Shown: in pieces, positions 1,172 to 54,567 of the stretch
How the letters are laid out: each line of letters starts with the position of its first letter
Numbering within the stretch: the first letter of the stretch is position 1
Assembly (NCBI RefSeq): GCF_022045235.1
Contig: NW_027266267.1
Coordinates: forward strand, 44,888,001 to 44,952,000
Length of the DNA stretch: 64,000 nt
Direction: 5' to 3'
Origin: Haliotis cracherodii
Lineage: Eukaryota
Translations under genes and position numbers: made by a program
The notes under the pieces: generated by a model
What the model was told of the DNA's origin: nothing
What the model saw: only the letters and a program-made list of their open reading frames with translations
Database searches by the model: none

Positions 1172-4100
1172 CTACTGAAGTTTTCCAACAACGAGTGCGA
1201 TGGATGTCACGTGGCCACCGTTTCCATCAAAGGTCATGCTGACGGTGTTTGTTGTTTTGACCTGTGATTCAGGGATCATGAACTCCCACACGTTCCATTT
1301 TGTTTTCCCCTCAATCTTCATAGCATCAAACAACATGTAGCTTGAAGACAGCGTCAGGCCATTGAAAACCACTTCATGTGGCTTTGTATTGGCGTTCATG
1401 TCTCGGCTAACTCCAACTCTAAGATGAGCTGTATGATAGCCTGAGCTGGGTAGATGGATGTTCGTCTGCACATGTCCGTTGATGATAGGGATGACCATGT
1501 CCTTACCATAGTATGTGGTCTGGTTGTCCGTGTGTATTCCGTTAAAGTTGTAGTTGGTTTTTAACTTGTAGAAGCAGGTTGAAGATCCAGGGAGACCAAC
1601 TGTTCCATTAAGCTTAGACATGTTGAAAGGGTAATTGAGATGAAGAGCTGGATAACCATTTTCGAACAGAATGCATGTTTCTTCACCCGTAGAAGGGTTG
1701 ATCCAGCTGTCGCTAAAGTCGAGTTTTACATTCTGCCTTTCACTTCCATAGTTGTGCAGAAGAACTACCATCTCTTTGCTTTGAGGATTTGCAAGAGCAA
1801 GAGGAGCAACTATTCTCTCTTGTCCACTATATTGACTTGTGACCCGGAGAAACTTTTGATCAAATGTAAAGTTTTGCCAAAACATGAAGTATTTGGTCGT
1901 TTGAAGGGGATGACCATCCTTCGTGAATAAGGAATTTCGAAGGGAATTATGACCAGGCCATTGACCATTTGATGCGAGAAACACTGTTACTCTGTCGATA
2001 AACTCTCTCATGTTAAGGAAAGTAAACATGAAGCCGTTTGGTTGATAAATGGTTTCGAACTCTATCATTCCATTTTCAACATCGGGGCTAACTCCGAAAA
2101 CGTTTCCTCTTCCAAATTCAGTGTTAACTAACTGAACACCTTTTCCTTTCTTGAGATGAGAGTAATTCTCCACCATGTCAAGAGAAGCAGCCAGACGAGC
2201 TTCATTGATGCCAAAGACGGTGTGATTTATTCCCAGTACACGCAGATAATTGTAGGAGTGGAAAGAGAAAAAGTCCAAGTGATCAAGAGACATGTCCAGA
2301 AACTTAGCAGTTCTGTTCCAGTAGCTAAAGTTATTTTCGTCTGCTTCTCGTAAGGCCATACTGGTATACGATGGCCCTGCAACTTTTATTCCAAATCTTG
2401 ATTTCAGTTTATCGGCGACGGCCTCGTGGAAATCTATATTCGTTTGTGGGTCAATAGTCTTTTCTTTCCAATCAGGTTCATTGATGACTTCAAATATGTA
2501 GGGAAGGCGTCCTCCTGTGTAACTCTTGGCACTCTGCACCATCAGTGACACAAGCTCTGACGCAGCGTCAACGTTGTTGGGGAATCCACCTTGATGATTA
2601 GACTTATTCATCCAGTTGGGCCAGGCCGAACCTATAACAAAGGAATATATGCAATTATGCAATAACAAAAATGGAAGACAACTCTATTAATCCCGTTTTC
2701 AAATACTTAAAACAATGTGAGTGAATAGGTCAAGTAGCAGACATTTACAGCTGTTGGTGAAAATGTCATGAGTATTCTGCCGCAAATGGAATCTTATCTT
2801 TCAAATTCTCCATTACTTTTTTCAAATAATTGTCAAAACGATTTAATGACTTTCAAAACCTTGTATGTTCCAGACCATGTTGTCGATGCCGCTCCCATAG
2901 CCATCCAGTTGTTGCATATAGGATGCCCATGTTCTTGACTGGAGTGCATGGTCCTTGAGATAGGTAGTGTTTGGGTAACCATGGCGACTAGGGCTTTGGG
3001 GCCACTGAATACAATAAAATGTTATGGTATGGATTTGCCAGTTTTCACTTTGGAAGGAGACATCTTATTATGTGCATGACTTCCATCCTAGAAATAAATT
3101 AACAAAAATGTTCCCAGGACAAACATTTGTCTTGATAGGGTGTTCAAATAGGAGATGAACTACTATGTTATCATTCGGTGATACCTGTGAATCAGCTTAA
3201 CTTCAATACTACACTGTTTGTCTAATATTAAAAACAACTGGTATAAAATCTCATTTTTTATTGCATGATACCAAATTTTATTGTCTTTATGGAACTTATA
3301 TGGGCTACGTGCATAAGACTGGCAGACTTTTCAGTCCCACCATAAAAACATAGCTATTTATGTCTTGATACCAAAAATCGACATTGATTGTATGAATATG
3401 TTCGAACATCTGACCCTTAGCCCTGTGGTTCAATATTTCTACATAAGTGCATTGCTAGCAAATCTTTTCTCTCAAAGGACCATTGTGAAATACACATACG
3501 TTTTACCAACTCATTGTATATGTCGTCACGTGATAAATATAGAGGTGTTTTACTGTAGAGCATTTTAAACATCTGGTTCAGATATATTCATCTTCTCAAA
3601 TCTGTAATTTTGTAAACATGGTATTAGAACTAACACACATTTGCAGGAAAGGTGAGTGAGTGGGTATGGTTTAACGCCGCTTTTAGCAACATTCCAGCAA
3701 TATCACAGAGGCGGACACCAGAAATGGGCTTCACACATTGTACCCATGTCGGGAATTGAACCCAGGTCTTCGGCATGACCAGTGAACGGTTTAACCACTA
3801 GACTACCCAATCGCCCCTTGCAGCAAAGGGAAACACAAAATGAATGAATCTGTACCCAACAGATCAATAGTGGAAAGTATGAGTATACGTTAGATACATC
3901 AGCTCCAACTGCTTCGTTCCCATTTCAAGTTATGTAGAAATACGGCTCCTTACAATGTACCCATCAAAGCACAGATTCTGCAGGCGTACTAGAACATTGA
4001 AACCATACATGAATAAAATTGTTTCTTAAAATTTTATCTTCATTGAAGATACGTACATTTGGAAAGAGACTCAGGTCTATGTTCATCCAACGCCCGGGAG

Positions 4101-4284
4101 CCGCTCCGATAGACTTCATCTTTGGAATTAGGTTCAACTGGGTGAGTCCATTAACTTTGTTCCATCTTTCAGGTTCATAATGGACACGTCCACCCTGGGA
4201 GAGCCATTCGTTGTATATTGTGACGGTTGTGTCAGGGAGCGCCGCTCTCCACAGGAACAATGTACACACTACCAGAAGTAACAT
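1172..4284 (-). CDS. GH86 beta-porphyranase/agarase-like secreted glycoside hydrolase, copy 1; exons 4284-4057, 3004-2860, 2631-1172 (610 aa)
   Basis: Hydrophobic N-terminus MLLLVVCTLFLWRAALP. GT/AG junctions (AAT|GTACGT, TTCAG|TGG, CAAG|GTTTTG, TATAG|GT) give 228+145+1460=1833 nt in frame. Motifs FEVINEP, NFSYWN..KFLD..LDFFSFHSY, LDMVENYS, NTEFG, LRVGVSR and TFDGNGGHVTS match my recollection of bacterial GH86 porphyranase A. Confidence 0.88.
3652..3817 (-). mobile_element. SINE family A (tRNA-Asp-like head, ~165 bp, (ACTC)n tail) in copy 1 intron 1
   Basis: A/B-box-like head; TSD ttgcag(g/c)aaagg; multiple copies in the window. Confidence 0.85.
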
Positions 4285-4478
4285 TCTGCAGTGGAATTTG
4301 GATAATCCTGTTCACGAATATTGGCTTTTAAATATTATATTCAAGGCTGTAATCTGTGTGTGAAGGCAGCACGTGACAGATGTCAGGCGATGTATAAAAC
4401 ATAAGATAAGAGTAATCATAGTAAGTTCACTTTAATTTCAACCTTGATCAGTTTGCCAAGTTTTATCTTGTTGATATA

Positions 4479-9311: not shown

Positions 9312-12300
9312 CTACTGAAGTTTCCCAACAACCAGTGCTACGGATGTCACGTGGCCACCATTTCCATCAAAGGTCATGCTGACGGTGTTCAATGTGTGGA
9401 CCTGTGATTCAGGAACCATGAACTCCCACACGTTCCATTTTGTTTTCCCCTCCGCCTTCATAGCATCAAACAGCATGTAGCTTGAAGACAGCGCATGGCC
9501 ATTGAACACCATTCTATTGGGTTTTGCATTGGCATTCTTGTCTCGGCTAACTCCCACTCTAAGATGAGCTGTATGATAGCCAGAGCCGGGTAGACTGATG
9601 GTTGTCTGCGCATGTCCGTTGCTGATGGGGATGACCATGTCCTTACCATAGTATGTGTTCCGGTTGTCGGTGCGTATTCCAGCAAAGTTGTAGTTGGTCT
9701 TAAAGTTGTAGAAGCAGGTTGAAGATCCAGGGAGACCAACTGTTCCATTAAGCTTAGACATGTTGAAAGGGTTATTGAGATGAAGGGCTGGATAACCATT
9801 TTCGAACAGAATGCATGTTTCTTCACCCGTAGAAGGGTTGATCCAGCTGTTGTTAAAGTCGAGTTTTACATTCTGCCTTTCACTGCCATAGTTGTGTAGA
9901 AGAACTACCATCTCTTTGCTTTGAGGATTTGCAAGAGCAAGAGGGGCAACCATTCTCTCTTGTCCACTATATTGACTTGTGATCCGTAGAAACTTTTGAT
10001 CATATGTAAAGTTTTGCCAAAACGTGAAGTATTTGGTCGTTTGAAGGGGATGACCTTCCTTCGTGAATAAGGAATTTCGAAGGGAATTATGGCCTGGCCA
10101 TTGCCCATTTGAGTGGAGAAACACAGTTACTCTGTCGATAAACTCTCTCATGTTAAGGAAAGTAAACATGAAGCCGTTTGGTTGATAAATGGTTTCGAAC
10201 TCTATCATTCCATTTTCAAGATCGGGGGCCACTCCGAAAACGTTACCTCTTCCAAATTCAGTGTTAATTAACTGAACATTTTTTCCTTTCTTGAGATGAG
10301 AGTAATTCTCCACCATGTCAAGAGAAGCAACCAGACGAGCTTCATTGATGCCAAAGTAGGTATGATTTCCACCCGATACACGCAGATAATTGTAGGAGTG
10401 GAAAGAGAAAAAGTCCAAGTGATCAAGAGACATGTCCAGAAACTTAGCAGTTCTGTTCCAGTAGCTGAAGTCATTTTCGTCTGCTTGTCGTAAGGCCATA
10501 CTGGTGTACGTTGGCCCTGCAACTTTCATTCCAAATCTTGATTTCAGCTTATCAGCGACGGCCTTATGGAAGTCTATATTCGTTTGTGGGTCAATAATGT
10601 TTTCCACCCAATCAGGTTCATTGATGACTTCAAATATGTGGGGACTGCGTCCTCCTGTGTAACTCTTGGCACTCTGAACCATCAGTGACACAAACTCTGA
10701 CGCAGCGTCAACGTTGTTGGGGAATTTACCTTGATGAAGAGACTTATTCATCCAGTTGGGCCAGGTTAAACCTATGATGAAGAAACATATACAATTGGAA
10801 AAGAAAATGGAAGTCGTATATTTTTTCATCTACCCTATTGGGCAAAAAGAGTATGAGTGGATAGGTGAAGTGTTGGTGAAATAAAAGATGATATGTATCT
10901 GCCACGTTTGGAATCTTATCTTTGAAAACTCTGTTTACTCTTTTCATATACTTCTCAAACCGATTTAATGACTTGCAAAACCTTGTATGTTCCAGGCCAT
11001 GTTGTCGATACTGCTCCCATAGCCAGCCAGTTGTTGCATATATGACGCCCATGTTCTGGACTGGAAAGCATGGTCCTTGAGATAGGTAGTGTCTGGGTAA
11101 CCATGGCGACTAGGGCTTTGGGGCCACTGAATAAAAAAATAATATGGAATGGATTTGGCAGTTTTCACTATGGTAGACATGTTCCAAGGTTCATGACTAC
11201 CCTCCTGGAATTAAATTATTATAAATGTTCCCAGGACAAACATTGGTTTTGAAAGGTTGTTTATATGAACTAATAGACAATCATATATTGATACCCGTGA
11301 CGGAGCTTCAATACTACATTGTTTATCTAATATTGAAAGAAAACTGGTGTAATATCTCAATTTGATTCGCTTTCTTTATGGAAAATAGGTGTGCAATATA
11401 TAAGACTAGCATACTTTCCAGTCACATCATAACATAAAACAGTTATTCATGTCTTTGTTCTAATAATCTACATTGATATGTGGAAGAAGATGTTACAAAA
11501 CACCTAACCCTTAGTCCTGTGGTTCAACATTGCTAGATAAGTGTTTTGCTTGAACAGCTTTCCTCTATTAGGACCGTTTTGAAATACACATATGTTTTAC
11601 CAACTCATGTTATATGTCGTCACGTGATAAATATAGAGTTACGTTTCATGTTAAAGCATTTTAAACATCTGATTCAAGGATTTTAAGTGTTAAGCTCCTC
11701 AAATAATTATGTTAACGACCTGTTGTCACTTTTTTACTTACCATATGTATTCTTCATGGGTGTATTGAATCCCTATGATATTGCTGTGCAGTGATACATG
11801 CCTGATCTGAGATGTTATGGCCCTGTTGACAACGTATCAGTGAGGGAAGGTACACACTGTACGGATTAGGGGTAATAATTGGTGTGGATGTGGGCAAAGT
11901 GACGACATTTTGCGATTTTCTGTATTTATTTTTAAACATCTGTTCTTCTTTGCGGCACCGTGAATTTAATTGAATAAGATCTATATGCACATAGTTTTGA
12001 ACTAACAAACATCAGCAAAAGAACATATTGAATACCTGAATCTGCACCCAGACAAATCAAGTGTTGACAGTATGAGCCGTGGTCATCTATGAGTGAGTGA
12101 GTGAGTTGGGTTTAACGCCGCTTTTAACAGTATTCCAGTTATATCACGGCGTGTCAGCTTAATGTGGGAGGAAAGCCCGAAGTGATGCAGGTCTCAGATG
12201 TTTACCACTTCGGTGAAACCCACGAGCACGGGTATGGTGCTGAAAAACCTAGAAACATAATTGGGGCGAACCGGTATTCGAACCGACAATCATAGGTTTC

Positions 12301-13051
12301 TGGCGTGCCCAAGGGACGCAACTCTGCACAGTGAATCGCGGCGCCTTAGACGACTGGGCCCCCGTGCCCCCGGTCAGCTATGAAGACATCGGACCCGAAC
12401 ACTTACTGCCCCATTTGCATTGCAAGGTAGGTATATTGTAATGAGCTATATTCCTATCTATGAAAGCATAGATTCGGTAGGAATACTTGGACATTGAAAC
12501 CATACATGAATCATATCATTTTCATCATAGACGATTCTGTTTACTTCATACATACATTTTACCCGTGAAGATCCGGGGTAGAATAGATCCTCAGCAACCC
12601 ATGCTTGCCGTAAAAGGTGACTATACTTGTCGTAAAAGGCGACTAATGGGATCGGGTGGTCAGGCTCGCTGACTTGGTGGATGCATGTCATCGATCCCAA
12701 TTGCGTGGATCGATGCTCATGATATTAATCACTGGATTGTCTGGTCCAGACCGTCATATAGCTGGAATATTGCTGAGTGCGGCGTTAAACAACAAAACAA
12801 CAAACCAACCAAATCATACATACATTTGGGAAGAGACTCTCATCGCTGTTCAACCAACGTCCGGGGGCCGTTCCGATAGATTTACACTTTGGAATTAGGT
12901 TCAGTTGGGTGAGTCCATTAATTTTGTTCCATCTTTGAGGTTCATAATGGACACGTCCACCCTGGGCGAGCCATTCGTTGTGGATTGTCACGGTTGTGTC
13001 AGAGAACGCCGCTCCCCAGAGCCACGAGGAGCACAGAACCAGCAGTACCAT
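9312..13051 (-). CDS. GH86-like glycoside hydrolase, copy 2; exons 13051-12824, 11126-10982, 10771-9312 (610 aa)
   Basis: Same exon sizes and phases as copy 1 (228/145/1460); EVINEP and NTEFG intact; signal peptide present. Confidence 0.88.
12091..12371 (-). mobile_element. SINE family B (~280 bp, tRNA-derived) in copy 2 intron 1
   Basis: Head GGGGGCACGGG..GGCCCAGTCGTCTAAGGCG, B box GGTTCGAAT; TSD ggtca(t/g)ctatga. Confidence 0.85.
12561..12811 (+). mobile_element. SINE family D (non-tRNA head ACCCGTGAAGATCCGGGGTAGAATAG..., (CAAC/CAAA)n tail) in copy 2 intron 1
   Basis: About ten copies in the window; source of the recurring spurious ORF MVRLADLVDACHRSQLRGS. Confidence 0.82.
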
Positions 13052-17810: not shown

Positions 17811-17820
17811 TATAATGGCA

Positions 17821-19630: not shown

Positions 19631-22600
19631 CTACTGAAGTTTTCCAGCAACGAGTGCGACGGATGTCACGTGGCCACCGTTCCCATCATAGGTCATACTG
19701 ACGGTGTTTGTTGTTTTCATCTGAGAGGGAGGGACCATGAACACCCACACGTTCCAATTTGTTTTCCCCACAATCTTCGAAGCATCAAACAGCATGTAGC
19801 TTGTAGACAGCGTGTTGCCATTGAAAACAACACTACGAGGTTTTGCATTGGCATTCTTGTCTCGGCTAGCTCCCACTCTAAGATAAGATGTATGGTAGCC
19901 AGAGCTGGGTAGATGGATGGTGGTCTGCGCATGTCCGTTGTTGATGGGGATGAGCATGTCCTTGCCGTAGTATGTTATCTCGTTGTCCGTGTGTATTCCG
20001 TTAAAGTTGTAGTTGGTTTTAAACTTGTAGAAGCAGGTTGAGGATCCAGGGAGACCGACGGTGCCATGAAGCTTGGATCTATCGAACTTGAAATCGGAAT
20101 TCATAGTTGGCTTACCGTTTTCGAACAGAATGCATGTTTCTTCACCTATAGAAGGGTTGAGCCAACTGTTTGGAAAGTCAAGTTTTACATTCTCAAATTT
20201 GCTGCCATAGTTGTGGAGAAGAACTACCATCTCTTTAGTGTGAGGGTTTGCAAGGGCAAGTGGTGAAACTATTCTCTCCTGTCCATTGTATTCACTTGAA
20301 ACTCGGAGAAACCTTTGATCATAAACAAAGTTTTTCCAAAACAGGAAGAATTTGGTCATTTCAAGGGGATGACCATCCTGGGTAAATAAGGAATTTCGAA
20401 GGGCAGTATGACCCGGGTATTGCTCATTTGAGAGGAGAAAGATTGTAACTCTGTCTATAAACTCTCTCAGGTTAAGGAAAGTAAACATGAAGCCGTTTGG
20501 TTGATAAATGGTTTCAAAGTCTGTCATTGCATTTTCAAATTCGCGGTCCACTCCTACCAGGTTATCTAAACCTAATCCAAATTCAGTGTTGACTAACTGA
20601 ACATTTTTTCCTTTCTTTTGATGAGAGTAATTCTCTATCATGTCAAGAGTAGCAACCAGACGAGCTTCGTTGATGCCAAAGAAGGTGTGGTTTGCACCCG
20701 ACATTTGCAAATAGTTGTAGGAATGGAAAGAGAAAAAGTCCAGGTGATCAAGAGACATGTCCAGAAACTTAGCAGTTCTCTTCCAGTAGGCGAAGTTATT
20801 TTCATCTCCTTGTCGTAAGGCCATACTTGTGTACGATGGTCCTGCAACTTTCATTCCAAATCTTGATTTCAGTTTGTCGGCGACGGCCTTGTGGAAATCT
20901 ATATTCGTTTGTGGGTCAATAATGTTTTCCACCCAATCAGGTTCATTGAGGGCTTCAAACATGTAGGGAAGGCGTCCTGATGTGTAGTCCTTGGCACTCT
21001 GCACCATCAGTGACACAAACTCTGATGCAGCGTCAACGTTGTTGGGAAACTTTCCTTGATGGTGAGACTTATCTATCCAGCTGGGCCAGTGCTGACCTGT
21101 GAAGAAGTAACATATACAATTAGAGAATAAGTCAAACATATTCATTTTTGTGTTCAGCTACGTGATTGGTATGTCAGTGTGAGTAGATTGGTGCCGTTGC
21201 AGATATTTACAACTGTTGGTGAAATAAAATAGCATGTGTATTCTGCAGACAGTGAGGTCAGCAAAAGGACACATTGAATACCTGAATCTGCACCCAGACA
21301 AATCAAGTGTTGACAGTATGAGCCGTGGTCATCTATGAGTGAGTGAGTGAGTTGGGTTTAACGCCGCTTTTAACAGTATTCCAATTATATCGCAGCGTGT
21401 CAGCTTAAAGTGGTGGGAAAGCCCGAAGTGATGCAGGTGTCAGACGTTTACCACTTCGGTGAAACCCACGAGCACGGGTATGGTGCTGACAAACCTAGAA
21501 ACATAATTAGGGCGAACCGGGATTCGAACCCACAATTATAGGTTTCTGGCGTGTCCAAGGGACGCAACTGTGCACAGCGAATCGCGGCGCCGTAGACGAC
21601 TGGGACACCCGTGCCCCCGAAATAGGATTAGCTTCAACGATGACTGAAACAGTAATAAAAGGCTAAGCCCAGAGTCTTTTAACACATTTTCTTTGTCTCC
21701 AGTTATGTTTGAAAAAATTGTGTCTCTTTTTAAATGCTAGGATTTGATGACTTGTGATACCTTCTATGTTCCAGACCATGTTGTCGATGTAGTTCCCATA
21801 TTCGTTCAATTGTTGCACATACCATCCGAATGTCCTTGCTTGGAGTGCATGGTCTTGGAGATAGGCAGGATCTGGGTAACCATGGCGACTTGGGTTTTGA
21901 GGCCACTAAATAAAATACAATAATATAGTATAGATTTTCAAGTTTTCCCAATTAACTAATACATGTTCATTTTGCATGGCTTCCATGTTGGAAGTAAATG
22001 AACATACATTATCCCAGAACAGCATTGTTGAAACATTCATTTGTTTTGAAAGGGTGTTCAAATATGTTATTAACAAATAGATTACCATATCGTCATACAT
22101 TTTGGTAGCTGAACTGCAGTGCTATATCGATATGTAACATTTAATGATACTGTTATCGGATATATTTTGATAGACCATATCTGTACTTTATATAAGACAA
22201 GTTGGTTGGTTTCTTGTTTAACGCCGCACTCAGCAATATTCCAGCTATATGACGGCGGTCTGTAAATAATCGACTCTGGACCAGACAATCCAGTGATTGA
22301 CATCATGAACATCGATCCACGCAATTTGGATCGACCAGCATCAACCAAGTCCACCTGACCACCCTATCCCGTTAGTCGCCATTTACGACAAGCACAGTCG
22401 CCTTTGATGGCAAGCATGGGTTGCTGAAGACCTATTCTACCCCGGCGTCTTCACGGGTCATATAAGACAATTAGTGTTTCCAGACAGAACAAATATTTTT
22501 TTATGTTTTTTTTAATAAAGAATACATTGATTGTATGCATTTCTGCCCATCACTTAACCCATAGACCTATGATTCGTCATTGGTGTCTAAGGGTATTGCT

Positions 22601-29000: not shown

Positions 29001-29009
29001 ACAAAAACC

Positions 29010-33102: not shown

Positions 33103-35676
33103 CTACTGAAGTTTTCCAACAACGAGTGCAACTGATGTCACGTGGCCACCATTTCCATCAAAGGTCATGCTGACGGTGTTTGTTGTTTTGACCTGTGATT
33201 CAGGGACCATGAACTCCCACACGTTCCATTTTGTTGTCCCCTCAACCTTCATAGCATCAAACAACATGTAGCTTGAAGATAGCGTCTGGCCATTGAACAC
33301 AACTTTGTGGGGCTTTGCATTGGCGTTCTTGTCTCGGCTAACACCTACTCTAAGATGAGATGTATGATAGCCAGAGCTGGGTAGATGGATGGTGGTCTGT
33401 GCATGTCCGTTGCTGATGGGGATGACCATGTCCTTGCCATAGTATGTATTCTGGTTGGTTGTGCGTAGTCTGGGAAAGTTGTAGTTGGTTTTAAACTTGT
33501 AGAAACAGGTGGATGACCCAGGGAGACCAACAGTGCCAAAAGGCTTAGACATGTTGAAATGCTTATTGGGATGAAGAGCTGGATTACCATGTTCGAACAG
33601 GATACATGTTTCATCACCCGTAGAAGGGTTGATCCAGCTGCTGTGGAAGTCAAGTTTTACATTCTGCCATTTACTGCCATAGTTGTGTAGAAGAACTACC
33701 ATCTCTTTGGTGTGAGGATTTGCCAGGGCAAGTGGTGCAACCATTCTTTCTTGTCCACTGTATTGATTTGAAACTCGGAGAAACTTTTGATCATAAATAA
33801 AGTTTTGCCAAAACGTGAAGAATTTGGTCATTTGAAGCGGATGACCATCTTTGGTAAACAAGGAACTTCGAAGGTTTTTATCATTATTTGAGAGTAGAAA
33901 CACGATAGCTCTTTCTATAAACTCTCTCAAGTTAAGGAAAGTAAACATGAAGCCGTTTGGCTGATAAATGGTTTCAAAGTCTGTCATTCCATTTGTAAAA
34001 TTGGAGGGAACTCCAAACACGTTGCCTCTTCCAAATTCACTGATTATTAATGGAACATTTTTTCCTTTCTTGAGATGAGAGTAATTCTCCACCATGTCAA
34101 TTGAAGCAACCAGGCGCGCTTCGTTGATGCCAAAGAAGGTGTGACTTCCACCCGATACACGCAGGTAGTTGTAGGAGTGGAAAGAGAAAAAGTCCAAGTG
34201 ATCAAGAGACATGTCCATAAACTTTGCAGTTCTCTTCCAGTAGCTGAAGTCATTTTCGTCAGATTTTCTTAAGGCCATACTGGTGTACGTAGGTCCGGCA
34301 ACTTTCATTCCAAATCTTGATTTGAGCTTTTGGGCGACGACCTTGTGGAAGTCTATATTCGTTTGTGGGTCAATAATCTTCTCCACCCAATCAGGTTCAT
34401 TGATGACTTCAAATATGTGGGGAATGCGTCCTCCTGTGTAGTCCTTGGCACTCTGCACCATCAGCGACACAAATTCTGATGCAGCATCAAGGTTGTTCGG
34501 GAATGTTCCTTGATGATTAGACTTAGCCATCCAGTCGGGCCACGTCAGATCTGTAAAGAAGTAACGTAAGAAACATTTGAGTCATATAAATTCACCCTGT
34601 GTTGAACTGTGTTATACGAAACTGAGTGTGTGTGTGTGGCTATTTCAAGTTGTAGACATTTACAACTTTGGGTAAAATAGGAAATCATTGATATTGTGTT
34701 GATAGTGATATCTGAGGCAAAATGTTATTCGGACCAATGACCAATGGAACTGTAATTACTGTTTAAAGGACTCAACGCAATGAGCTGTGGAGTGTCAGAC
34801 ACCAGAACGACCGTTCCGTAACTGCTTTTAGTGTTGATTCAAAATATATATTCCTCTTAATGTGTATTTATAAATCCGATTTATGGAACCTTTCAATTCC
34901 CAGACCATGTTGTCAATGACACTCCCGTAGCTATTTAGCTGTATCATATACGACGCCCATGTCTTTGACTGGAGTGAATGATCCTGGAGATAGGCAGGGT
35001 CTGGGTAACCATGGCGACTAGGGCTTTGATGCCACTGAATAACATAAAAAAATATGGTTTGGATTTGGCCGTCATTCTATCAAACAATCTAAAATGTCCC
35101 AGAAATGTTGCTTCCACACACACACACACCCACACACACACCCCACCCCACCCCACACCCCACACCCCACACACACCCCTCCAAACCAGCACCCCCAATG
35201 GAAAACATTTGATACTTTAAGCTGGACATGAGAAACCAGTATTTGAAAGTATGAGCAACGGTGAGCGCGATAATACATTAGAACCTAGCTCTCACAGTCT
35301 GATTCCCTTTTTTAAGTTAGGAAGGGGTATAGGGCTCATTACAAAATACCCATAAACTCATTGGTTCGTTTAAACAAACGAAGACTTTAAATTCAAATCA
35401 AAATGTTTTCTGTATGCCAAATCTGTTTTATGACAAACTTACATTTGCAAACAGATTATTGCTCAGGTCTACGTGAATCCAACGCCCGGCAGCCGTTCCG
35501 ATAGATTTACACTTTTGAATTAAGTTCGAGTGGGTGAACCCATTGTGTTTGTTCCATCTTTCAACTTCATAATGGACCCGTCCACCCTGAGAGAGCCACT
35601 CGTTGTAGATGGTGATTGTTGTGTCCGGGAACACCGCTCCCAACAGCAACATGGTGCACACAACCAGTAGTAGCAT
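33103..35676 (-). CDS. GH86-like glycoside hydrolase, copy 4; exons 35676-35443, 35034-34890, 34550-33103 (608 aa)
   Basis: 234/145/1448 nt in frame; consensus donor AAT|GTAAGT; EVINEP and PLIISEFG. Confidence 0.88.
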
Positions 35677-40120: not shown

Positions 40121-42916
40121 CTACTGAAGTGTTCCAACAACTAGTGCGACGGACGTCACAGTACCTCCGTCTCCATCAAATGTCATGTTGACATTGTTTG
40201 TTGGGTGGACCAGTGATTCGGGGACCATGTACTCCCACACGTTCCATTTTGTTTTCCCAAGAATCTTCATAGCATCAAACAGCATGTAGCTTGCAGACAC
40301 TGCCTGGCCATTGAACACAACTTCCTGGGGTTTTGCATTGGCGTTCTTGTCTCGGCTAACTCCTACTCTAAGATGAGCTGTATGATAGCCAGAGCCGGGT
40401 AGACTGATGGTTGTCTGCGCATGTCCGTTGCTGATAGGGATCACCATGTCCTTGCCATAGTATGTGTTCTGGTTGTCAGTGCGTATTCCAGCAAAGTTGT
40501 AGTTGGTTTTAAACTTGTAGAAGCAGGTTGAAGATCCCGGGAGACCAACGGTTCCATTATGCTCAGACATGTTGAAAGGGTAATTGAGATGAACAGCTGG
40601 ATTACCATTTTCGAACAGAATGCATGTTTCTTTACCAGTAGAAGGGTTGATCCAGCTGTTGTTAAAGTCAAGTTTCACATTCTCAAATTTACTGCCATAG
40701 TTGTGGAGAAGAACTACCATCTCTTTGGTGTGAGGGTTTGCAAGGGCAAGTGGTGCAACTTTTCTCTCCTGCCCATTGTACTGACTTGAGACTCGCAGAA
40801 ACGTTTGATTAGAATTAAAGTTATGCCAAAAGGTGTAGAATTTGGCCGCTGAAAGGGGACGACCGTCCGTTGTGAACAAGGAATTTCGAAGGGAAGTATG
40901 ACCTGGGTATTGTTCATTTGCGAGGAGATATGCTGTAACTCTGTCTATAAACTCTCTTAGAGTAAGAAAAGTAAACATGAAGCCGTTAAGTTGATAAATG
41001 GTCTGGAAGTCTGTTATTCCATTTTCAAAGTTGGGACTAACGCCAAGATTAAGTAAACCTAATCCAAATTCAGTGTTAACTAACTGAACACCTTTTCCTT
41101 TCTTTTGATGAGAGTAATTCTCCACCATATCAAGAGAAGCAACCAGACGAGCTTCGTTGATACCATAGTAGGTATAATTACTAAAGTTGGTGTGATTTCT
41201 GCCTGGTATATGCAGATAGTTGTAGGAATGGAAAGAGAAAAAGTCCAAGTGATCAAGAGACATGTCCAGGAACTTAGCAGTCCTCTTCCAGTAGCTGAAG
41301 TCATTTTCATCTGCTTGTCGTAAGGCAAAACTGGTGTACGATGGGCCTGCAACTTTCATTCCAAATCTTGATTTCAGCTTATCAGCGACGGCCCTTTGGT
41401 AATCTACATTTGTTTGTGGGTCAATAATCTTTTCGGCCCAATCAGGTTCATTGATGACTTCAAATATGTAGGGAAGGCGTCCTCCTATGTAACTCTTGGC
41501 ACTCTGCACCATCAGCGACACAAGTTCTGACGCAGCGTCAACGTTGTTGGGGAATCCACCTTGATGATTAGACTTATTCATCCAGTTGGGCCAACTCAAA
41601 CCTAAATATACAATACATTATGTAATGAGAAAAACTGTACATCAAACATGTTCATTCCATGTCAAATGGTTTTCTAGGTAATTGAGTACGTGCGGATAGG
41701 GGAAGCTGCAGACAATTACATTTCTGGTGAATAAATAGACCATGGGTATTCTGCCGAAATAAAATAAAATATTAGTACAGCTAAACGTGATTCTAATCAA
41801 CGACCAATGAAACAGTAATTACAGACTAAAGACTGGACTGCCTTAGGCACTGCAACACATGTACCGCATCTGCTTTGTATTCAGTTATCTTTCCAAAACT
41901 ATGTTCCTCTTTTAATATACTTATTAAACCTATTAAATGAAACATAAACCTTTCATTTCCCAGACCATGTCGTCGACGACACTCCCATAGCCAGTCAGTT
42001 GAAACATGTAGGAACCCCATGTCCTTCTCTGCAGTGCATGGTCCTGAAGATAGGTGGGGTCTGGGTAACCATGGTGACTAGGGTTTTGAGGCCACTGAAT
42101 AAAAAAATAATATAAAGTAGGTATTTGTCAATTTTCTCAGAGACAGAACAACTGGATCATATGTTGATCATATGAATGTGTGCAAGAATATATTTTCCCT
42201 CACCTAACCCATAGTCCTGAGTTTCACCATTGGTGTTTCAACGTATATGTGTCCTCTCAAATGACAATAGCGAAATATACGATATGTTCTACACACTGAC
42301 TCTATACGCCATCACGGGATAAATATAGAGTTGCGTGTCATTGTAAAATATTTGATGAGTTTACTGACCACACTTACTGTTCATGGGTCTATAATCATGC
42401 AGTGATACATGCCTCATCTGAGATTGTTTGCCCCTCTTAACAATGATCCACACAAGTGGGATGCGATGACATGCATCAACCAAGTCAGCGAGGCTGACCA
42501 ACCGATCCCATTTGTTGACTCTTACGACAAGCATAGTTGCCTTTTAAATCAAGCATGGGTTGCTGATGACTTTTTCTACCCCGGATCTTCAAGAGTACTG
42601 GGACATTGAAATTATACATGAATCATTTCATTTCCTAAACTCTTTTTTTCTGAATAGAAGATGTATTTTCCTTCATACATACATTTGCAAAGAGATTCTC
42701 TCTCAGGTCTCTGTTCACCCAACGCCCGGGAGCCGTTCCGATAGATTTACAATTAGGAATAAGTGTCCTTTTGTCGAGAGCATTATGTTTGTTCCATCTT
42801 TGAGGTTCGTAATGGACACGTCCACCCTGGGAGAGCCACTCGTTGTAGATTGTGACGGTTGTGTCAGAGTACGCCGCTCCCCAGAGCAACAAGGTGTACA
42901 GGACGAGTAGAAACAT
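40121..42916 (-). CDS. GH86-like glycoside hydrolase, copy 5; exons 42916-42683, 42094-41950, 41601-40121 (619 aa)
   Basis: 234/145/1481 nt in frame; catalytic motifs intact. Confidence 0.88.
42445..42595 (-). mobile_element. Older partial SINE family D in copy 5 intron 1
   Basis: Diverged match to the 5' half of family D. Confidence 0.7.
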
Positions 42917-42919
42917 TCT

Positions 42920-48130: not shown

Positions 48131-48211
48131 CATGCCACCTTCTCTTGGCACATCATTCCTCGTGTAGAATATGAATCAAAACAAACAAACTATTCTTTGA
48201 GGGAATTTTAT

Positions 48212-51200
48212 TTACTGAAGTTTTCCAGCAACGAGTGCGACGGATGTCACGTGGCCACCATTTCCATCAAAGGTCATGCTGACGGTGTTTGTTGTTTTGA
48301 CCTGTGAGTGAGGGACTAAGAACTGCCACACGTTCCATTTTGTTTTCCCCACAGTCTTCTCAGCATCAAACAGCATGTAGCTTGTAGACAATGCGTGGCC
48401 ATTGAACACAACCCCACGAGGTTTTGCATTAGCATTCTTGTCTCGGCTCACTCCCACTCTAAGATAAGATGTATGGTAGCCAGAGCCGGGTAGACTGATG
48501 GTTGTCTGCGCATGTCCGTTGCTGATGGGGATGACCATGTCCTTGCCATAGTATGTGATCTGGTTGTCCGTGTGTATTCCGGCAAAGTTGTAGTTGGTTT
48601 TAAACTTGAAGAAGCAGGTTGAAGATCCAGGGAGACTGACGGCACCATGAAGCTTAGATCTGTCGAAATGGTTACCGGAATGAATAGCTGGATTACCGTT
48701 TTCGAACACAACACATGTTTCTTCACCTGTAGAAGGGTTGATCCAATTGTTGGGGAAGTCGAGTTGTACTTTCTCAATGTTACTGCCATAGTTGTGAAGA
48801 AGGACCACCATCTCTTTGGTGTTAGGGTTTGCAAGGGCAAGTGGTGCAACTATTCTCTCCTGTCCATTGTATTGACTTGAGACTCTGAGAAATTTATGAT
48901 CATTAATAAAGTTTTTCCAAAATATGTAGAATTTGGCCGCTGGAAGAGGATGACCATCCTTGGTAAATATGGAATTCCGAAGGGAAGTATGACCCGGGTA
49001 TTGCTCATTTGAGAGGAGATACGCTGTAACTCTGTCAATAAACTCTCTCAGAGAAAGAAAGGTAAACATGAAGCCGTTTTGTTGATAAATGGTTTCAAAG
49101 TCTGTCATTCCATTTTCAAAGTCGGGGCTAACGCCAAGATTAAGTAAACCTAATCCAAATTCAGTGTTAACTAACTGAACATTTTTTCCTTTCTTTTGAT
49201 GAGAGTAATTTTCCACCATGTCAAGGGAAGCAACCAGATGAGCTTCGTTGATGCCCGAGTAGGTGTGACTTTGACCTGTTATATGCAGACGGTTGTAGGA
49301 GTGGAAAGAGAAAAAGTCCAAGTGATCAAGAGACATGTCCAGAAACTTGGCAATTATCTTCCAGTTGCTGAAGTTATTTTCGTCTGCTTGTTCCAAGAAC
49401 ATACTGGTATACGTTGGTCCGGCAACTTTCATTCCAAATCTTGATTTCAGCTTATCAGCAACTGCCTTGTGGTAGTTTATATTCGTTTGTGAGTCAATTA
49501 CATTTGGGTACCAATCAGGTTCATTGATGACTTCAAATACACGGGGAATACGTCCTCCTATGTAGTCCTTGGCACTCTGAACCATAAGTGACACAAACTC
49601 CGCTGCAGCGTCAACGTTGTTTGGGAATGTACCTTGGTGATCAGACTTATTCATCCACTTCGGCCAGCTCAAACCTATAAAGAACAACATATACAGTCAT
49701 AACAAATGTAACTCAAACATATTCATCTACTGTTAACCTACTTCATGCGTAAATGAGTCTGTCTGGAAAGCTGAAGTTGTACACATTTACGACGTTTGGT
49801 GAAATAATTGATCTTGGGTATTCTTCAGACAGAAATATTAGCAGCTAAACTGGATTCTAGCCAACGGAGCATCAATTAAAGGCTAAAGGACTGAACTCAG
49901 AGAATTTTGGAGCAACAGACAATGCGAATCATGTTAAGCATATGCTTGGTCTTCAGTTAGCTTTCAAAATTTATGCTCCTCTTTTTATATACTATTTAAA
50001 CCAATTAAATGACTTATAAAACCTTTCATTTCCCAGACCATGTCGTCGATGGCACTCCCATAGCCATTCAGTTGAAACATATACGAATCAAATGTCCTTC
50101 TCTGGAGTGCTTTGTCCTGGAGATAGGCAGGGTCTGGGTAACCATGGTGTTGAGGGTTTTGAGGCCACTGAATAAAATAAGAAAAAGTAATATGGATTTG
50201 CCAGTTTTCTCTATGAAAGAATGAATGTTATTTTTTGCATGACATCCATGTTTGGAGTAAATCAACAAAAAATATCCAGGCCAGCATTGTCAAAACAAAC
50301 ATTTACACTGAAATGACCATTGAGAAGTACACTATATATTCCACCAACATTTATGCCCCTCTATACAGCGCATCAGTTATGGCAGGCATAGACTGAACTG
50401 GTCAAGGTTGACATGGTTTGGGGCTAAGCTTTTTGTTTATAAACCAATATGCTACGAAGTGGCACCCTGAGATCTACTGGAATTGAAACCAACATTTGCA
50501 GTAAAGGAACACATTAAATAATGTAATCTGATCTGTACCGTGAGTATATATAAATGCAATAGCTCACACACTACAACCGCCTCATTCCCATTTCAAGGTA
50601 TCACATCAAACAAGAAGGCTTTCGTTTTTATCCGTATGTTGTCTTTGAACGAAACAACGACGTTTTTTGGACGCTTTGTTTCCATCGGTCTTCCATCCAA
50701 ATAACGCCGTTATTTGACATCTGAATTGACTACGAGAGAACGATGCTATGAAGCTCCTCCCTTAAATGTCAATCACGCATCATCGTTTACCGTTACTTCT
50801 ATGTTCTCAGCTTTAAACGGATGCGAAAATGATGTACACAGAGCTCTATTTGTTTGAGCAGTTTGCCAGAACGAAGACAAGATAATAACGTTCCTGAGAA
50901 GATACGTTTTCGGGACCTGTCTGTCTCACAGTTCCTGTAACATATTATTTTCCTACAAGCCCTAACTGTGATGACTTTAGTTCTGAATTAAGAAGCAACT
51001 CCAGATTTTCCTGAATCTCCCATCTCACTGTGGCTCCTTTTCAATTTAAATGTAGTTGTTTGTTCCTCTAAAATCATTAGGCTAGCTCACAACCTGTACA
51101 GTTTGCAAACATTAACCTTATTGTGGCGCTTTAAACAGTAAATAGATAAAAGTCCAGAGTCATGTCAGATGCTGTTCGTGAGATCTATTGTGTGTGTACT

Positions 51201-54200
51201 ATATGTTAAAATAGTGAGGAACACATTACTCTAACGCCTCAAGTGACTTTGTGTAGATGTTAAGCGTCAACACATGTGCAAACGGTAACTGATTGTAAGA
51301 CCCCCGGAAATACTCACTCGCTGATGCAGTTACAAACTGAAATAAAGGACCGCAACATTCATTCATTTTCACAGACCGCCTCAAGGTCGTGGTGTCTCTT
51401 CAGGCACTCGTCCCAGTCACATTCTCTTCATGTGAGCATGCGTTACGATTATTTTGTGGCTTCTATAATATAAATCAAAGGTGTTTTATTTAACGAGCAT
51501 GAATATCATATTCCACCAAGCTGTTGGTTCTGCATGAAATGTTCTTCATAAATACTTTGAATTATGAAATTAAGGAGTCACCAAATTAATGCAAGTGTCA
51601 ACCCCCGGCCTAAAATGCATGATGACATCAATGCAAGTAGTCCTCCCTCTAAACTATAACAAACCAATCAGCAAACAATAGACGTTCGATTGATACATGT
51701 TGTTATTTTCACAAACTTCACTTTAACTGTTGATCTAACTACTATGAAGTCAGCAAGCAAATTATGCATTATCACAGCATGGTGTCAGTGTTAAACGCTG
51801 ATTCAAACTGAACAAATAGGACCGCAACAGATTGCCTGTAGGTAGCGTGGTGTTACTTCTGGCACTCATCCAAGTCACATTCTCTTCATGTAATCATTCA
51901 TTACGTCATATACATGCACATGTAGGAATATAAAGCGAAGATGGTTTGTTTAGTGTTTCTAATCAGTAGCACGGATAATGATAACGATGGTCATGTCAGG
52001 GCAATCAACATCGGGGAAATCTCTGTTTTAGAATAGCAGATATATACTGTACACAACAATAGCACCTCAGGTGCAGTTTACAGGGAGGATTGTGTTCACT
52101 CAGAGTTTAAAAAAAGCTGCTACATATACAAAACATTGTTGCACAGTACTTTTAACGTGTACCATAAAAAGCAGAAACATTTGCTGTTTTTCAACAGGAT
52201 AAATTCTCAGACAACATTTGGCAGTGTCTTTTTTCTAAACCAGTTTTTGCAGATTTGCAGTTACATTTACACCATAAGATAGGAAAGTTAATAGTCTACA
52301 TCTCTGCATAATGTTATAGCCTGAGGGAGATTCAGTGCTGAGTGAGCGCATTTCTCACACAACCTTCACTTTTCAAATCTTGGGAAAATGTGCGTCAGAA
52401 AAACCAGCATTCACCGTGTTAAACCAATTACCGTTTTTAGGGATACTGGTTGACTTCAAACTCTGATTTTGGATGGTATTTTGCCACTTTCTGGGGAATC
52501 TCCATTTGATGTTTCGGTTTTGTTGGTCAAGGTCGAGGTTGTAGAAACTCTACCTGTTAAAGGTGTAGACTTACTTATTGGGAATGATTTGGCAGGTTAA
52601 AGATGTTTGGCTGATTCTATTGTTTGTCTTGAGTCCAGCACTTCGGAAAGTACTGAAGATCTTGAAAAAGAAATTCCAGGTATTTTTCCTTCATGTGTTC
52701 TTACAAAGCAAAGTCCTTCTGATAATGATTCCGGCTAAGGTTTGCCAGGCACCTTAATGGATCGATCTCCTGACCTGTCTACATTTTCGATGGAGAGTAC
52801 TGAGCATTCTCATAGTTTGACTCTTGAGGAACCAGTTCTGGATAGGCAACAGTTAGTTAAGTTACAGGGAGTAGACCAACTGATCTAAAACAACAAATAG
52901 TTATGGGAGATTTCTAAAAGAAACTTCACTCCTGAGTAGAGTCCCACTCTTGTTTAGTAACACCAAACACTAGGCTTACCAAAAAGCAAGAAACATTAAT
53001 TATTTACCACACTTATAACTCGACTTCAAATGGGAGGGAAATAAGTGTTAAGTCAATGTGAAAACCCAGGTTGTGCTTGAAAATGTACCACAATGTATCA
53101 ACTGTATTTAGATCGATTTATGTGCCATGTGAAATTCATCGGAGCTTCATGGGATATAGGTCAATATGTTAGCAATAAATACCAGCAAAAGTGTTCTTAA
53201 ATTGTTGTGTGGTCTCTGTTTGTTGTGGATGAATAGTGTGTTATGGATCTAAACGTAGAAACTCTATTCGTATCTGGTAAACGTAAAATTACATAATGCA
53301 CTGATGCAGAAAGATGTTTTGATAACACTTTTCAAACTGCGCTATGGGCGATAATAGATAATAGATGCACTGGTACGTAAAGCTGTGCATAAAGTTCAAG
53401 CGAACTGCACTGTATGAGAAAGTAGATGACGCCCTATGTGTGGTTCTACTGTCCACTGAAATTTGTGTTTTTTAGTTCCACACTTTAAGGTCTCGAACCA
53501 TTGACCAATGTGACGTGAGGGGGTAGAGAGTGGGCAGGAGTCTCCAGAGAGTGGTTGGGATATTCGATCTTGAGGACAGATAATTGCAATGACAAACAAT
53601 AACAAAAACAATGTTGAGTGTAAGTACCTAAAGTACTGAACTAATAATAGTCCATTCAAATCGCTGTAAGCAACATCTCATATTTCATAAGATTTACTTT
53701 CATTTACTGTTGTAACCAAATAATAGACAACCGATTGTCTGATAGAATTACATGTGCATAGCAGAGGGATATGTGTATCAATAAACATGGAATTGTGATT
53801 TAGTTTAATTTATCGACGCATGTTTGAATTCCAGTAACAGGTTACAAATCCTAAAACTCGCCAGCAAATCTTGCTGTACCGCGCGGGACAGATATTAGAG
53901 AACAGCTTGCAATGGCAGTCAGAAATAGGAAACTTGCTACTTCCTAAAGACAGCCGTCGACATCATGTACGTCAGGGGGCTGGCGCAATGTAATAGGCAG
54001 TTACGACTCGTAACATTTGCTAAAGGCAGAGGAAAAAGCATTGTTTTTCCATATATTTTCCAATTGAAAACTTCGATGTTTTTTCCGGACACTTTCTGGA
54101 CGCTCACCAATTAATCAATTTTAATGAATTTGTAGTCGTGTTCCGTCCAATGCCATTATACGAAAACCAACTATGTTACGTTTTTGCTGTGCATGTTGCT

Positions 54201-54567
54201 ATACGACCCCTTGCAACAAAAAACCCATTAAAGCATGGATACGGTAGTCAAACTAGGATAATGAAATCATATATGAACTATTTCATTTCCTAAAATCTTT
54301 CTGCATGGAAGATTCTTTTTACTTCATACGTACATTTGCAAAGAGATCTGCTCTCAGGTCTCTGTTCACCCAACGTCCGGGAGCTGTTCCGATGGATTTA
54401 CAATTAGCAATTAGGGCCTTTCCGGTGAGCCCATTATGTTTGTTCCATCTTTGGGGTTCATAATGGACACGTCCATCCTGGGCGAGCCACTCGTTGTAGA
54501 TTGTCACAGTTGTGTCAGAGAAGGCCTCCTCCCACAGCAACAAGGTGCACAGAACCAGTAGTAACAT
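48212..54567 (-). CDS. GH86-like glycoside hydrolase, copy 6; exons 54567-54334, 50167-50023, 49674-48212 (613 aa)
   Basis: 234/145/1463 nt in frame; catalytic motifs intact; intron 1 expanded to about 4.2 kb. Confidence 0.86.
52380..52900 (+). mobile_element. Gypsy-type LTR retrotransposon protease-region remnant inside copy 6 intron 1
   Basis: PITVFRDTG, LPVKGVDLLIGNDLAG and PGIFPSCVLT. Confidence 0.6.

What the first reader, a model, noticed from the sequence alone, without database searches (positions are those of the whole stretch)
1172..54567. Tandem array of six intron-containing, secreted GH86 beta-porphyranase/agarase-like genes in an animal genome
Seen: six head-to-tail minus-strand genes, each with a signal peptide, three in-frame exons, and intact NEP (acid/base) and (T/S)EFG (nucleophile) glutamates. 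They sit among metazoan SINEs and LINEs, so contamination is unlikely. Established: GH86 enzymes such as Bacteroides plebeius BpGH86A are clan-A TIM-barrel hydrolases of red-algal galactans (porphyran, agarose) characterised from bacteria. The blocks NFSYWN..KFLD....LD.FS.H.Y, LDMVE.YS, PL.ISEFG and the C-terminal 'NTVS.TF.G.GGHV.S' match my recollection of that enzyme. Inference: an algae-grazing mollusc, probably abalone, encodes its own amplified system for digesting red-seaweed sulfated galactans, a job usually credited to gut bacteria. Database annotations of similar mollusc genes may exist; I know of no biochemical characterisation.
Basis: partly seen in the sequence, partly recalled or inferred. 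Interest (0 to 1): 0.92.

Follow-up and report, generated by a model that had tools for sequence, protein, structure and literature searches.

The report
Abalone's own GH86 red-seaweed galactanase genes
The black abalone genome carries six intact, intron-containing, secreted copies in this window (about 48 genome-wide) of a glycoside hydrolase family (GH86 agarase/porphyranase) otherwise found almost only in bacteria, so the animal itself, not only its gut microbes, may break down red-seaweed galactans; databases already name these genes automatically but I found no paper on them.

Summary
The window is Haliotis cracherodii chromosome DNA (G000:C4:44,888,001-44,952,000). It holds six head-to-tail minus-strand genes. 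Each has three exons, GT..AG introns, a hydrophobic signal-like N-terminus and intact NEP and (S/T)EFG glutamates.

GH86 membership is firm:
- Pfam BPA_C passes its gathering score in all six.
- A family profile hits the BuGH86 agarase at E=1e-95 over the full length.
- An AlphaFold model superposes on all three solved GH86 enzymes at TM about 0.8. The next families (GH30, GH39) stay below 0.5.

The six genes are only part of the picture:
- The array runs beyond the window: 11 same-strand copies plus one inverted pseudogene.
- The genome holds about 48 full-length copies in clusters on six chromosome-scale contigs.
- The only close relatives are molluscan: Haliotis, a chiton, mussels and a pearl oyster. 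They form one strongly supported group that is 31% identical or less to anything else.
- Deep paralogues share the three-exon structure, so the introns predate the amplification.
- Pairwise dN/dS of 0.23-0.45 indicates purifying selection.

RefSeq already names these genes "beta-porphyranase A-like". No paper in the searchable library reports an animal GH86.

The parts
1172..4284 (-). Gene 1 (610 aa; = RefSeq P0006 'funoran endo-beta-hydrolase-like'): exon 1 4057-4284, exon 2 2860-3004, exon 3 1172-2631 including the stop
   Evidence: tblastn mapping is 99.6-100% identical. Splice sites and open frames were checked. BPA_C E=2e-9. The -2 pocket residue is Ala.
9312..13051 (-). Gene 2 (610 aa; = P0003 'beta-porphyranase A-like'): exon 1 12824-13051, exon 2 10982-11126, exon 3 9312-10771
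   Evidence: Mapping and splice sites. BPA_C E=1.5e-10. The -2 pocket residue is His.
19631..23522 (-). Gene 3 (614 aa; = P0012): exon 1 23289-23522, exon 2 21761-21905, exon 3 19631-21096
   Evidence: Mapping and splice sites. BPA_C E=8e-7.
33103..35676 (-). Gene 4 (608 aa; = P0001 'funoran endo-beta-hydrolase-like'): exon 1 35443-35676, exon 2 34890-35034, exon 3 33103-34550. It is the only copy with ISEFG, and it has a shorter loop after the -2 pocket.
   Evidence: Mapping and motifs. AlphaFold model with pLDDT 85.8. Foldseek TM 0.81 to BuGH86.
40121..42916 (-). Gene 5 (619 aa; 97% identical to cluster representative P0019): exon 1 42683-42916, exon 2 41950-42094, exon 3 40121-41601
   Evidence: Exons and best match. 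BPA_C E=3e-8.
48212..54567 (-). Gene 6 (613 aa; = P0020): exon 1 54334-54567, exon 2 50023-50167, exon 3 48212-49674. Intron 1 is 4166 nt.
   Evidence: BPA_C E=4e-8.
4285..4455 (-). Conserved upstream block of about 170 nt, shared by all six genes. The others lie at 13052-, 23523-, 35677-, 42917- and 54568- onward. It contains a TATA-like TTTAAAAG about 45 nt before the ATG and is a putative shared core promoter.
   Evidence: Alignment A2 has 67% mean column identity, with invariant runs near the ATG. Promoter function is inferred.
57510..57664 (-). Relic exon-2-like GH86 fragment between gene 6 and the next gene of the array
   Evidence: tblastn with P0035, E=1e-5.

Best explanation
These are genuine nuclear genes of the black abalone. 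They encode secreted, catalytically competent retaining glycoside hydrolases of family GH86. Each protein has a clan GH-A (beta/alpha)8 barrel followed by two beta-sandwich domains. The acid/base is Glu178 in the NEP motif and the nucleophile is Glu298 in (S/T)EFG (P0001 numbering).

The family most likely entered an early mollusc from a bacterium. It then acquired a signal-peptide exon, two introns and a TATA-type promoter. In Haliotis it was later amplified by tandem duplication into about 48 copies, of which this window holds six.

By analogy with every characterised GH86, the enzymes most likely cleave internal beta-1,4 galactosidic bonds of agaran-type red-algal galactans (agarose, porphyran, funoran or coralline agarans) in the gut lumen. 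That would release neoagaro-type oligosaccharides, which other host or microbial enzymes finish.

The residue that fills or opens the 6-sulfate pocket of the -2 subsite differs between paralogues: Ala in g1, His in g2, Leu in g3-g6. This suggests the copies have diversified in which decorated galactans they accept.

What is shown: gene structure, family membership, fold, catalytic residues, purifying selection, copy number and taxonomic distribution. What is inferred: secretion, tissue of expression, substrate, and the horizontal origin with its timing.
For: Endogenous origin:
- Canonical GT..AG introns in conserved phases.
- The same three-exon structure in paralogues only 37-50% identical, on other contigs.
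- Exon GC of 44.5% against 39% in flanking DNA, with no bacterial-like island.
- Retroelement and transposase relics between the genes.
- The window lies on a 45.3-Mb contig, and there are orthologues in H. rufescens, H. rubra and H. asinina.

GH86 membership:
- BPA_C passes its gathering score in all six.
- phmmer of exon 3 alone hits 8H97, 5TA1 and 4AW7 at 5e-18 to 6e-13, with nothing else significant.
- The family profile hits 5TA1 at E=1e-95 from residue 18 to 612.
- The AF2 model has pLDDT 85.8 and pTM 0.87.
- Foldseek gives TM 0.73-0.81 to the three GH86 structures and 0.49 or less to GH30, GH39, GH51 and GH79.

Catalysis:
- The nucleophile mutated in 5TA0 (E322Q; PMC5849685) aligns with E298.
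- N177, E178, P179 and E298 are invariant in 22 sequences.
- Both motifs are intact in all six genes.

Selection: pairwise dN/dS is 0.23-0.45.

Origin:
- Of 1.84 billion cluster representatives, only 11 score below 1e-30. Those that carry names are all mollusc.
- The next hits are 31% identical or less. The named ones are bacterial agarases, mainly Verrucomicrobiota and Bacteroidota.
- Molluscs form one group with SH-aLRT 100.

Specificity pocket: the alignments place BuGH86 Met (PFAM) and BpGH86A Ser326 (PFVS) opposite F-L-[A/H/L] in the abalone genes.
Against: - No expression or splicing data could be obtained. The RefSeq models are automatic predictions.
- No biochemical data exist for any mollusc GH86.
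- Identity to characterised enzymes is low, 17-20% in the structural alignment and 22-27% by sequence. Substrate transfer by homology is therefore weak.
- Pfam Porphyrn_cat_1 is not detected in the six proteins.
- The family also occurs in filter feeders, Mytilus and Pinctada, which do not graze red seaweeds.
- From general knowledge, adult black abalone eat mostly brown kelps.
- The pocket-residue reading rests on HMM alignments in a divergent region. It also needs the paper's 'M396' to be the Met that I count as residue 369.
- In the tree the nearest neighbours of the molluscs are two long-branched EukProt entries, not named bacteria. The donor is therefore unidentified.
Confidence: 0.66

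Rival explanations
1. The genes are real, secreted, active GH86-fold hydrolases, but the mollusc clade has moved to a different substrate. Candidates are another algal, diatom or biofilm galactan, or a glycan from detritus. The 'porphyranase/agarase' label would then be misleading.
For: Identity to any characterised GH86 is at most about 27%. A long branch of 0.57 leads to the mollusc clade. The family is present in filter-feeding mussels and a pearl oyster. The -2 subsite residue is variable and gene 4 has a loop deletion there. Porphyrn_cat_1 falls below threshold.
Against: In what I read here and recall, all characterised GH86 activities act on agaran-type galactans (PMC5849685, plus my own knowledge of the family). 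Residues typical of the clan GH-A active site are invariant. The full three-domain architecture is kept at TM about 0.8. The grazers with the family, abalone and chiton, do scrape red and coralline algae (general knowledge).
Confidence: 0.22
2. The family has a non-digestive role. Examples would be remodelling algal surfaces or biofilms at larval settlement, or defence and recognition of galactan-bearing microbes. In that case it would be expressed outside the digestive gland.
For: Large, fast-diverging tandem families (dN/dS up to 0.45) are also typical of recognition and defence genes. No tissue data were available.
Against: The catalytic glutamates are strictly conserved in every copy examined. 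The proteins have no added binding or membrane domains. Other endogenous abalone polysaccharidases are hepatopancreas enzymes (PMC11025796 and PMC6181387).
Confidence: 0.07
3. The mollusc genes descend vertically from an ancient eukaryotic GH86, or came from a eukaryotic donor, rather than by bacterium-to-mollusc transfer.
For: The two nearest non-mollusc sequences in the tree, P0110 and P0112, come from EukProt sources.
Against: Those two branches are very long and the program flags the join as possible long-branch attraction. One of them is from a single-cell amplified genome and also occurs in metagenome contigs. No other animal phylum appears in searches of 5.8 billion 90%-identity clusters and 1.84 billion representatives of about 15 billion proteins.
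Confidence: 0.1
4. Bacterial contamination or an assembly artefact.
For: GH86 is otherwise an almost exclusively bacterial family.
Against: The genes have spliceosomal introns and host-like composition. Animal transposon relics lie between the copies. The contig is chromosome-scale. The architecture is conserved in about 48 copies, with orthologues in four abalone genomes.
Confidence: 0.01

Closest known systems
BuGH86, beta-agarase of Bacteroides uniformis NP1 (PDB 5TA1/5TA0/5TA5; PMC5849685)
   Same: It is the best profile match (E=1e-95 over the full length) and the best structural match (TM 0.81/0.78). It shares the (beta/alpha)8 barrel plus two Ig-like domains. The NEP acid/base is the same, and its nucleophile E322 aligns with E298.
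   Different: Identity is only about 17-25%. It is a bacterial gene in a polysaccharide-utilisation locus with no introns. The Met that fills its -2 pocket is replaced by Leu, Ala or His in the abalone copies. The abalone genes have a eukaryotic signal-like N-terminus, a three-exon structure and tandem amplification.
BpGH86A, beta-porphyranase of Bacteroides plebeius (PDB 4AW7)
   Same: Same family, fold and catalytic pair. It matches BPA_C and the profile at E=3e-52, with TM 0.73/0.79. The small pocket residue of gene 1 (Ala) resembles its Ser326, which leaves room for the 6-sulfate.
   Different: The profile alignment covers only the region from residue about 169 onward. The N-terminal part is more divergent, and four of the six abalone copies have a bulky Leu at the pocket.
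Aga86A_Wa, GH86 agarase of Wenyingzhuangia (PDB 8H97)
   Same: It is the best single-sequence PDB hit of exon 3 (E=5e-18), with Foldseek TM 0.79.
   Different: It is a bacterial, longer protein (742 aa) and about 20% identical.
Other endogenous polysaccharidases of abalone and invertebrates: the host-encoded alginate lyase of H. discus hannai (PMC6181387), the GH45 cellulase of H. rufescens (PMC11025796), and GH32 genes acquired from bacteria by invertebrates (PMC11311677)
   Same: Same general kind of thing: an animal-encoded enzyme for a dietary plant or algal polymer, which in the GH32 case is reported as acquired from bacteria.
   Different: Different CAZy families and substrates. None of them acts on red-algal agarans. 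The scale of amplification here, about 48 copies, is unusual.

Membership tests
CAZy GH86 | Significant sequence similarity to characterised GH86 catalytic modules, stronger than to any other GH family | tested here: met
   phmmer of exon 3 hits only the GH86 chains 8H97, 5TA1, 5TA0 and 4AW7, at 5e-18 to 6e-13. The next hit is at E=0.35. The profile hits 5TA1 at 1e-95, 8H97 at 1e-91 and 4AW7 at 3e-52.
CAZy GH86 | Clan GH-A (beta/alpha)8 barrel followed by two beta-sandwich (Ig-like) domains | tested here: met
   The AF2 model has pLDDT 85.8, with an alternating strand/helix barrel over residues 19-375 and an all-beta region over 382-607. Foldseek aligns the whole length to the GH86 structures at TM 0.73-0.81. 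GH30 and GH39 reach 0.49 or less.
CAZy GH86 | Retaining catalytic pair: acid/base Glu in an NEP motif and nucleophile Glu | tested here: met
   N177, E178, P179 and E298 are invariant in 22 homologues. Both motifs are present in all six genes. E298 aligns with BuGH86 E322, the residue mutated in 5TA0.
CAZy GH86 | Pfam BPA_C (PF18040) C-terminal domain | tested here: met
   It passes the gathering score of 26.2 bits in all six, scoring 29.5-41.4 bits.
CAZy GH86 | Pfam Porphyrn_cat_1 (PF18206) beta-sandwich domain 1 | tested here: inconclusive
   No hit at E<=1 in the six proteins. The chiton paralogue P0074 passes (30.9 bits against a cutoff of 27) and P0084 is borderline. The corresponding beta-sandwich is present in the model.
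CAZy GH86 | dbCAN / CAZy family HMM assignment | not tested
   No dbCAN library is available among the tools.
CAZy GH86 | Endo-hydrolysis of beta-1,4 linkages of agarose, porphyran or funoran | not testable with these tools
   This needs recombinant enzyme assays.
Horizontally acquired animal CAZyme | Animal sequences form one clade nested among, or next to, bacterial sequences, and are absent from other animal phyla | tested here: inconclusive
   Molluscs form one group with SH-aLRT 100, set among bacterial GH86. No other animal phylum was found. However, the tree is unrooted, the nearest neighbours are two long-branched EukProt entries, and no close donor was found.

The most novel reading that the evidence does not exclude
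Molluscs own an ancient animal clade of GH86 enzymes, the first animal-encoded agarase/porphyranase family. In abalone it has expanded to about 48 genes whose -2 subsite pockets have diversified. The host itself would then depolymerise the differently sulfated and methylated agarans of red and coralline algae, a step so far credited to gut bacteria.
Probability: 0.5. Interest if true: 0.78.

Novelty: new member of a known kind. Interest (0 to 1): 0.6.

Why it matters
The reviews and abalone gut studies read here credit agar and porphyran breakdown in seaweed-eating molluscs to gut bacteria (PMC2817930, PMC5870069, PMC6181387). A dedicated survey of mollusc glycoside hydrolase families does not mention GH86 (PMC7560691).

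A host-encoded GH86 family under purifying selection, with about 48 copies, would change how the host and its microbiome are thought to share red-seaweed digestion in a commercially farmed and, for this species, endangered grazer. It would add an ancient case to the short list of bacterial-type carbohydrate enzymes fixed in animals. It would also offer eukaryote-adapted agarases and porphyranases for biotechnology.

The question is directly testable by expressing a few paralogues.

Two things temper this. Automatic RefSeq names already point to the family. The enzymatic role is still an inference.

Tried and rejected
- As a result there is no RNA or splicing evidence, and intron positions in Mytilus, Pinctada and Liolophura could not be examined.

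Exons were translated and searched one at a time by reference. Full-length comparisons used database proteins returned by the search (P0001 and others).

Searches that gave little:
- The search for related loci in 185,579 bacterial and archaeal genomes gave only three remote loci at 22-25% identity (Verrucomicrobia, Rikenellaceae and Porphyromonas MAGs), so no donor was identified.
- Nine literature searches found no paper on an animal or mollusc GH86 or on an endogenous mollusc agarase.
- The HGT compendium PMC13342648 has no supplement held as text and no relevant passage.
- The tRNA scan for tRNA-derived SINEs found nothing.
- A search of the scan's findings for 'GH86 porphyranase agarase' found nothing.

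Method notes:
The reported tree uses LG+G4 with a quick search.
- I tried to map the other specificity residues of PMC5849685 (T82/F77 and Q138/H114) onto the abalone proteins. The alignment there, at the end of exon 1 and around the intron-2 junction, is too uncertain to use.

Rejected readings:
- Contamination, because of the introns, the transposon neighbours and the composition.
- GH5 or GH39 membership, because the Pfam hits are sub-threshold and the structural TM is below 0.5.
Full report
WHAT IS THERE

The window contains six paralogous minus-strand ORFs of 475-505 aa. Mapping RefSeq proteins found by homology search onto the window shows that each ORF is the third exon of a three-exon gene. 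Exact boundaries were derived exon by exon:
- Exon 1 is 228 or 234 nt, runs from the ATG to a GT donor, and ends in phase 0.
- Exon 2 is 145 nt, runs from AG to GT, and ends in phase 1.
- Exon 3 is 1448-1481 nt up to the stop codon.

All 18 exons are open in frame and all 12 introns are GT..AG. Intron 1 is 408-4166 nt and intron 2 is 210-664 nt. The products are 608-619 aa.

Five genes correspond to Haliotis cracherodii RefSeq proteins at about 97-100% identity in every exon (P0006, P0003, P0012, P0001, P0020). The sixth, g5, is 97% identical to P0019, the representative of a 90%-identity cluster.

Full-length analyses used the database proteins.

The window is G000:C4:44,888,001-44,952,000 of a 45.3-Mb contig and contains no N.

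ENDOGENOUS, NOT CONTAMINANT

- The introns are spliceosomal, with conserved phases.
- Exon GC is 44.5% against 39% for the rest of the window, and the composition profile shows no bacterial-like island.
- An RNase_H/RVT_3 retroelement ORF (45902-47065) and a DDE_3 transposase relic (36313-36552) lie between the genes. Decayed LINE-like ORFs lie at about 37.2-39.1 kb (read by eye).
- About 170 nt upstream of each ATG is conserved among the six copies and includes a TATA-like TTTAAAAG about 45 nt upstream. Promoter function is inferred.
- Orthologues exist in H. rufescens, H. rubra and H. asinina.

FAMILY

- Pfam BPA_C (PF18040) passes its gathering score in all six. GH5 and GH39 hits are sub-threshold.
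- Exon 3 of g4 alone hits only GH86 chains in the PDB: 8H97 at 5e-18, 5TA1 at 2e-16 and 4AW7 at 6e-13.
- A profile of 22 homologues (A1) hits BuGH86 (5TA1) at 1e-95 from residue 18 to 612, that is, the entire mature protein.
- An AlphaFold model of P0001 (pLDDT 85.8, pTM 0.87) superposes on BuGH86, Aga86A_Wa and BpGH86A at TM 0.73-0.81. The next folds (GH30, GH39, GH51, heparanase) reach 0.49 or less.
- The BuGH86 nucleophile E322, mutated in 5TA0 (PMC5849685), aligns with E298. The NEP glutamate is E178. Both are invariant across the alignment and present in all six genes.
- Residues 1-17 are Met plus a hydrophobic run that precedes the first residue aligned to the bacterial structures, as expected for a signal peptide.
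- The only membership feature not met is Pfam Porphyrn_cat_1, which is undetectable in these six although present in a chiton paralogue. The corresponding beta-sandwich is present in the model.

SIZE AND AGE OF THE FAMILY

A six-frame search of the whole genome finds about 48 full-length exon-3 copies, at least 45 of them without internal stops. The count is a stated lower bound. They lie in clusters:
- C4 at 44.88-45.02 Mb: this array, with 11 same-strand copies and one inverted pseudogene just upstream of the window.
- C4 at 23.7-25.7 Mb.
- C23 at 42.07-42.25 and 47.27-47.30 Mb.
- C25, C80, C1 and C12.

Fetching five distant loci showed the same architecture (76-99 aa, about 48 aa, about 487 aa) in paralogues only 37-50% identical to g4. 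The introns therefore predate the amplification.

Pairwise dN/dS among the six is 0.23-0.45, with dS of 0.15-0.43. That indicates purifying selection with some relaxation or diversification.

DISTRIBUTION AND ORIGIN

- A search of 1.84 billion cluster representatives gives 328 hits. Only 11 score below 1e-30, and all the named ones are Haliotis or Mytilus.
- Name-bearing searches add only Pinctada and the chiton Liolophura.
- Everything else is 31% identical or less. Where named, it is a bacterial agarase or an Ig-domain protein: Verrucomicrobiota such as Haloferula and Rubellicoccus and several MAGs; the Bacteroidota Lutibacter, Reichenbachiella and Pontibacter; and Algibacillus.
- In a maximum-likelihood tree of 25 mollusc and 62 other sequences, the molluscs are one side of a branch with SH-aLRT 100. 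The chiton and bivalve sequences sit among the deep Haliotis clades.
- Their nearest neighbours are two very long-branched EukProt entries. The program flags that join as suspect.

The most economical reading is one ancient acquisition, probably from a bacterium, in an early mollusc, followed by loss in many lineages and expansion in abalone. The donor and the direction are not shown.

FUNCTION

The GH86 activities I read about here or recall are all endo- or exo-hydrolysis of beta-1,4 bonds in agaran-type galactans (PMC5849685, plus general knowledge).

That paper places agarose versus porphyran selectivity largely in the -2 subsite. BpGH86A has Ser326 at the base of a 6-sulfate pocket, and BuGH86 fills the pocket with a Met. 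By my count in the HMM alignments, those residues are the fourth positions of PFVS and PFAM. The Met comes out as residue 369, not the printed 396. They align with F/Y-L-X in the abalone proteins, where X is Ala in g1, His in g2 and Leu in g3-g6. Gene 4 also has a shortened following loop and ISEFG instead of NTEFG.

This suggests, without proving, that neighbouring paralogues differ in the decorated galactans they accept.

LITERATURE

Nine full-text searches found no paper on an animal GH86.
- An agarase review states that mollusc agarase comes from gut microorganisms (PMC2817930).
- The abalone microbiome papers assign GH86 to Polaribacter and similar bacteria (PMC5870069).
- A survey of mollusc GH families omits GH86 (PMC7560691).

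The library lacks most subscription journals, so prior publication cannot be excluded. The RefSeq names show that the similarity has been picked up automatically.

VERDICT

The digestive role on red-algal galactans is plausible but untested.

In kind, this is a new (animal) member of a known enzyme family. It is notable for its copy number, its age within Mollusca, and what it implies for the division of labour between host and microbiome.

Noticed in passing
window 58146-59753: A 63-bp satellite of 25.5 copies with 88% matches. It produces long spurious ORFs on both strands (for example 58108-59784, 558 aa) and meaningless repeat-driven Pfam hits.
   Followed up: partly
window 45902-47065 (-), with repeat 46602-47044: A retroelement ORF with RNase_H and RVT_3 domains. 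Its N-terminal part is a 108-bp tandem repeat of 4.1 copies at 96% identity. It sits between genes 5 and 6.
   Followed up: partly
window 55417-55753: A 36-bp tandem repeat of 9.4 copies with 97% matches, just upstream of gene 6.
   Followed up: no
window 36313-36552 (-) and about 37225-39071 (-): A DDE_3 (Tc1/mariner-type) transposase relic, and a string of short ORFs that look like a decayed non-LTR retrotransposon (endonuclease- and RT-like motifs by eye). They lie between genes 4 and 5.
   Followed up: partly
L009 (G000:C4:44880001-44888000), about 1227-3518 (+): Immediately outside the window there is an inverted GH86 copy. It has frame breaks and stops (1 TGA and 2 TAA), so it is a pseudogene at the edge of the array.
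   Followed up: partly
L010 (G000:C4:44952001-44960000): A seventh intact three-exon GH86 gene (exon 3 about 90% identical to P0020) continues the array. A duplicated fragment of the C-terminal 118 residues lies next to it (2531-2884).
   Followed up: partly
G000 contig C4, 44.88-45.02 Mb of 45.30 Mb: The array lies within about 0.3-0.4 Mb of the end of the chromosome-scale contig. A subtelomeric setting might favour tandem amplification.
   Followed up: no
proteins P0102 and P0103 (Mytilus coruscus 'CHST1'; Mytilus edulis 'DDE-1 domain-containing'): These two mussel gene models carry GH86-like segments fused to unrelated parts. They are probably merged gene models next to GH86 genes or fragments.
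   Followed up: no
proteins P0110 and P0112: The nearest non-mollusc neighbours in the tree come from EukProt: a Picozoa single-cell genome and an unnamed transcriptome. Whether protists really encode GH86 or these are bacterial contaminants is open.
   Followed up: no
This abalone may therefore carry several domesticated bacterial-type glycosidases.
   Followed up: no
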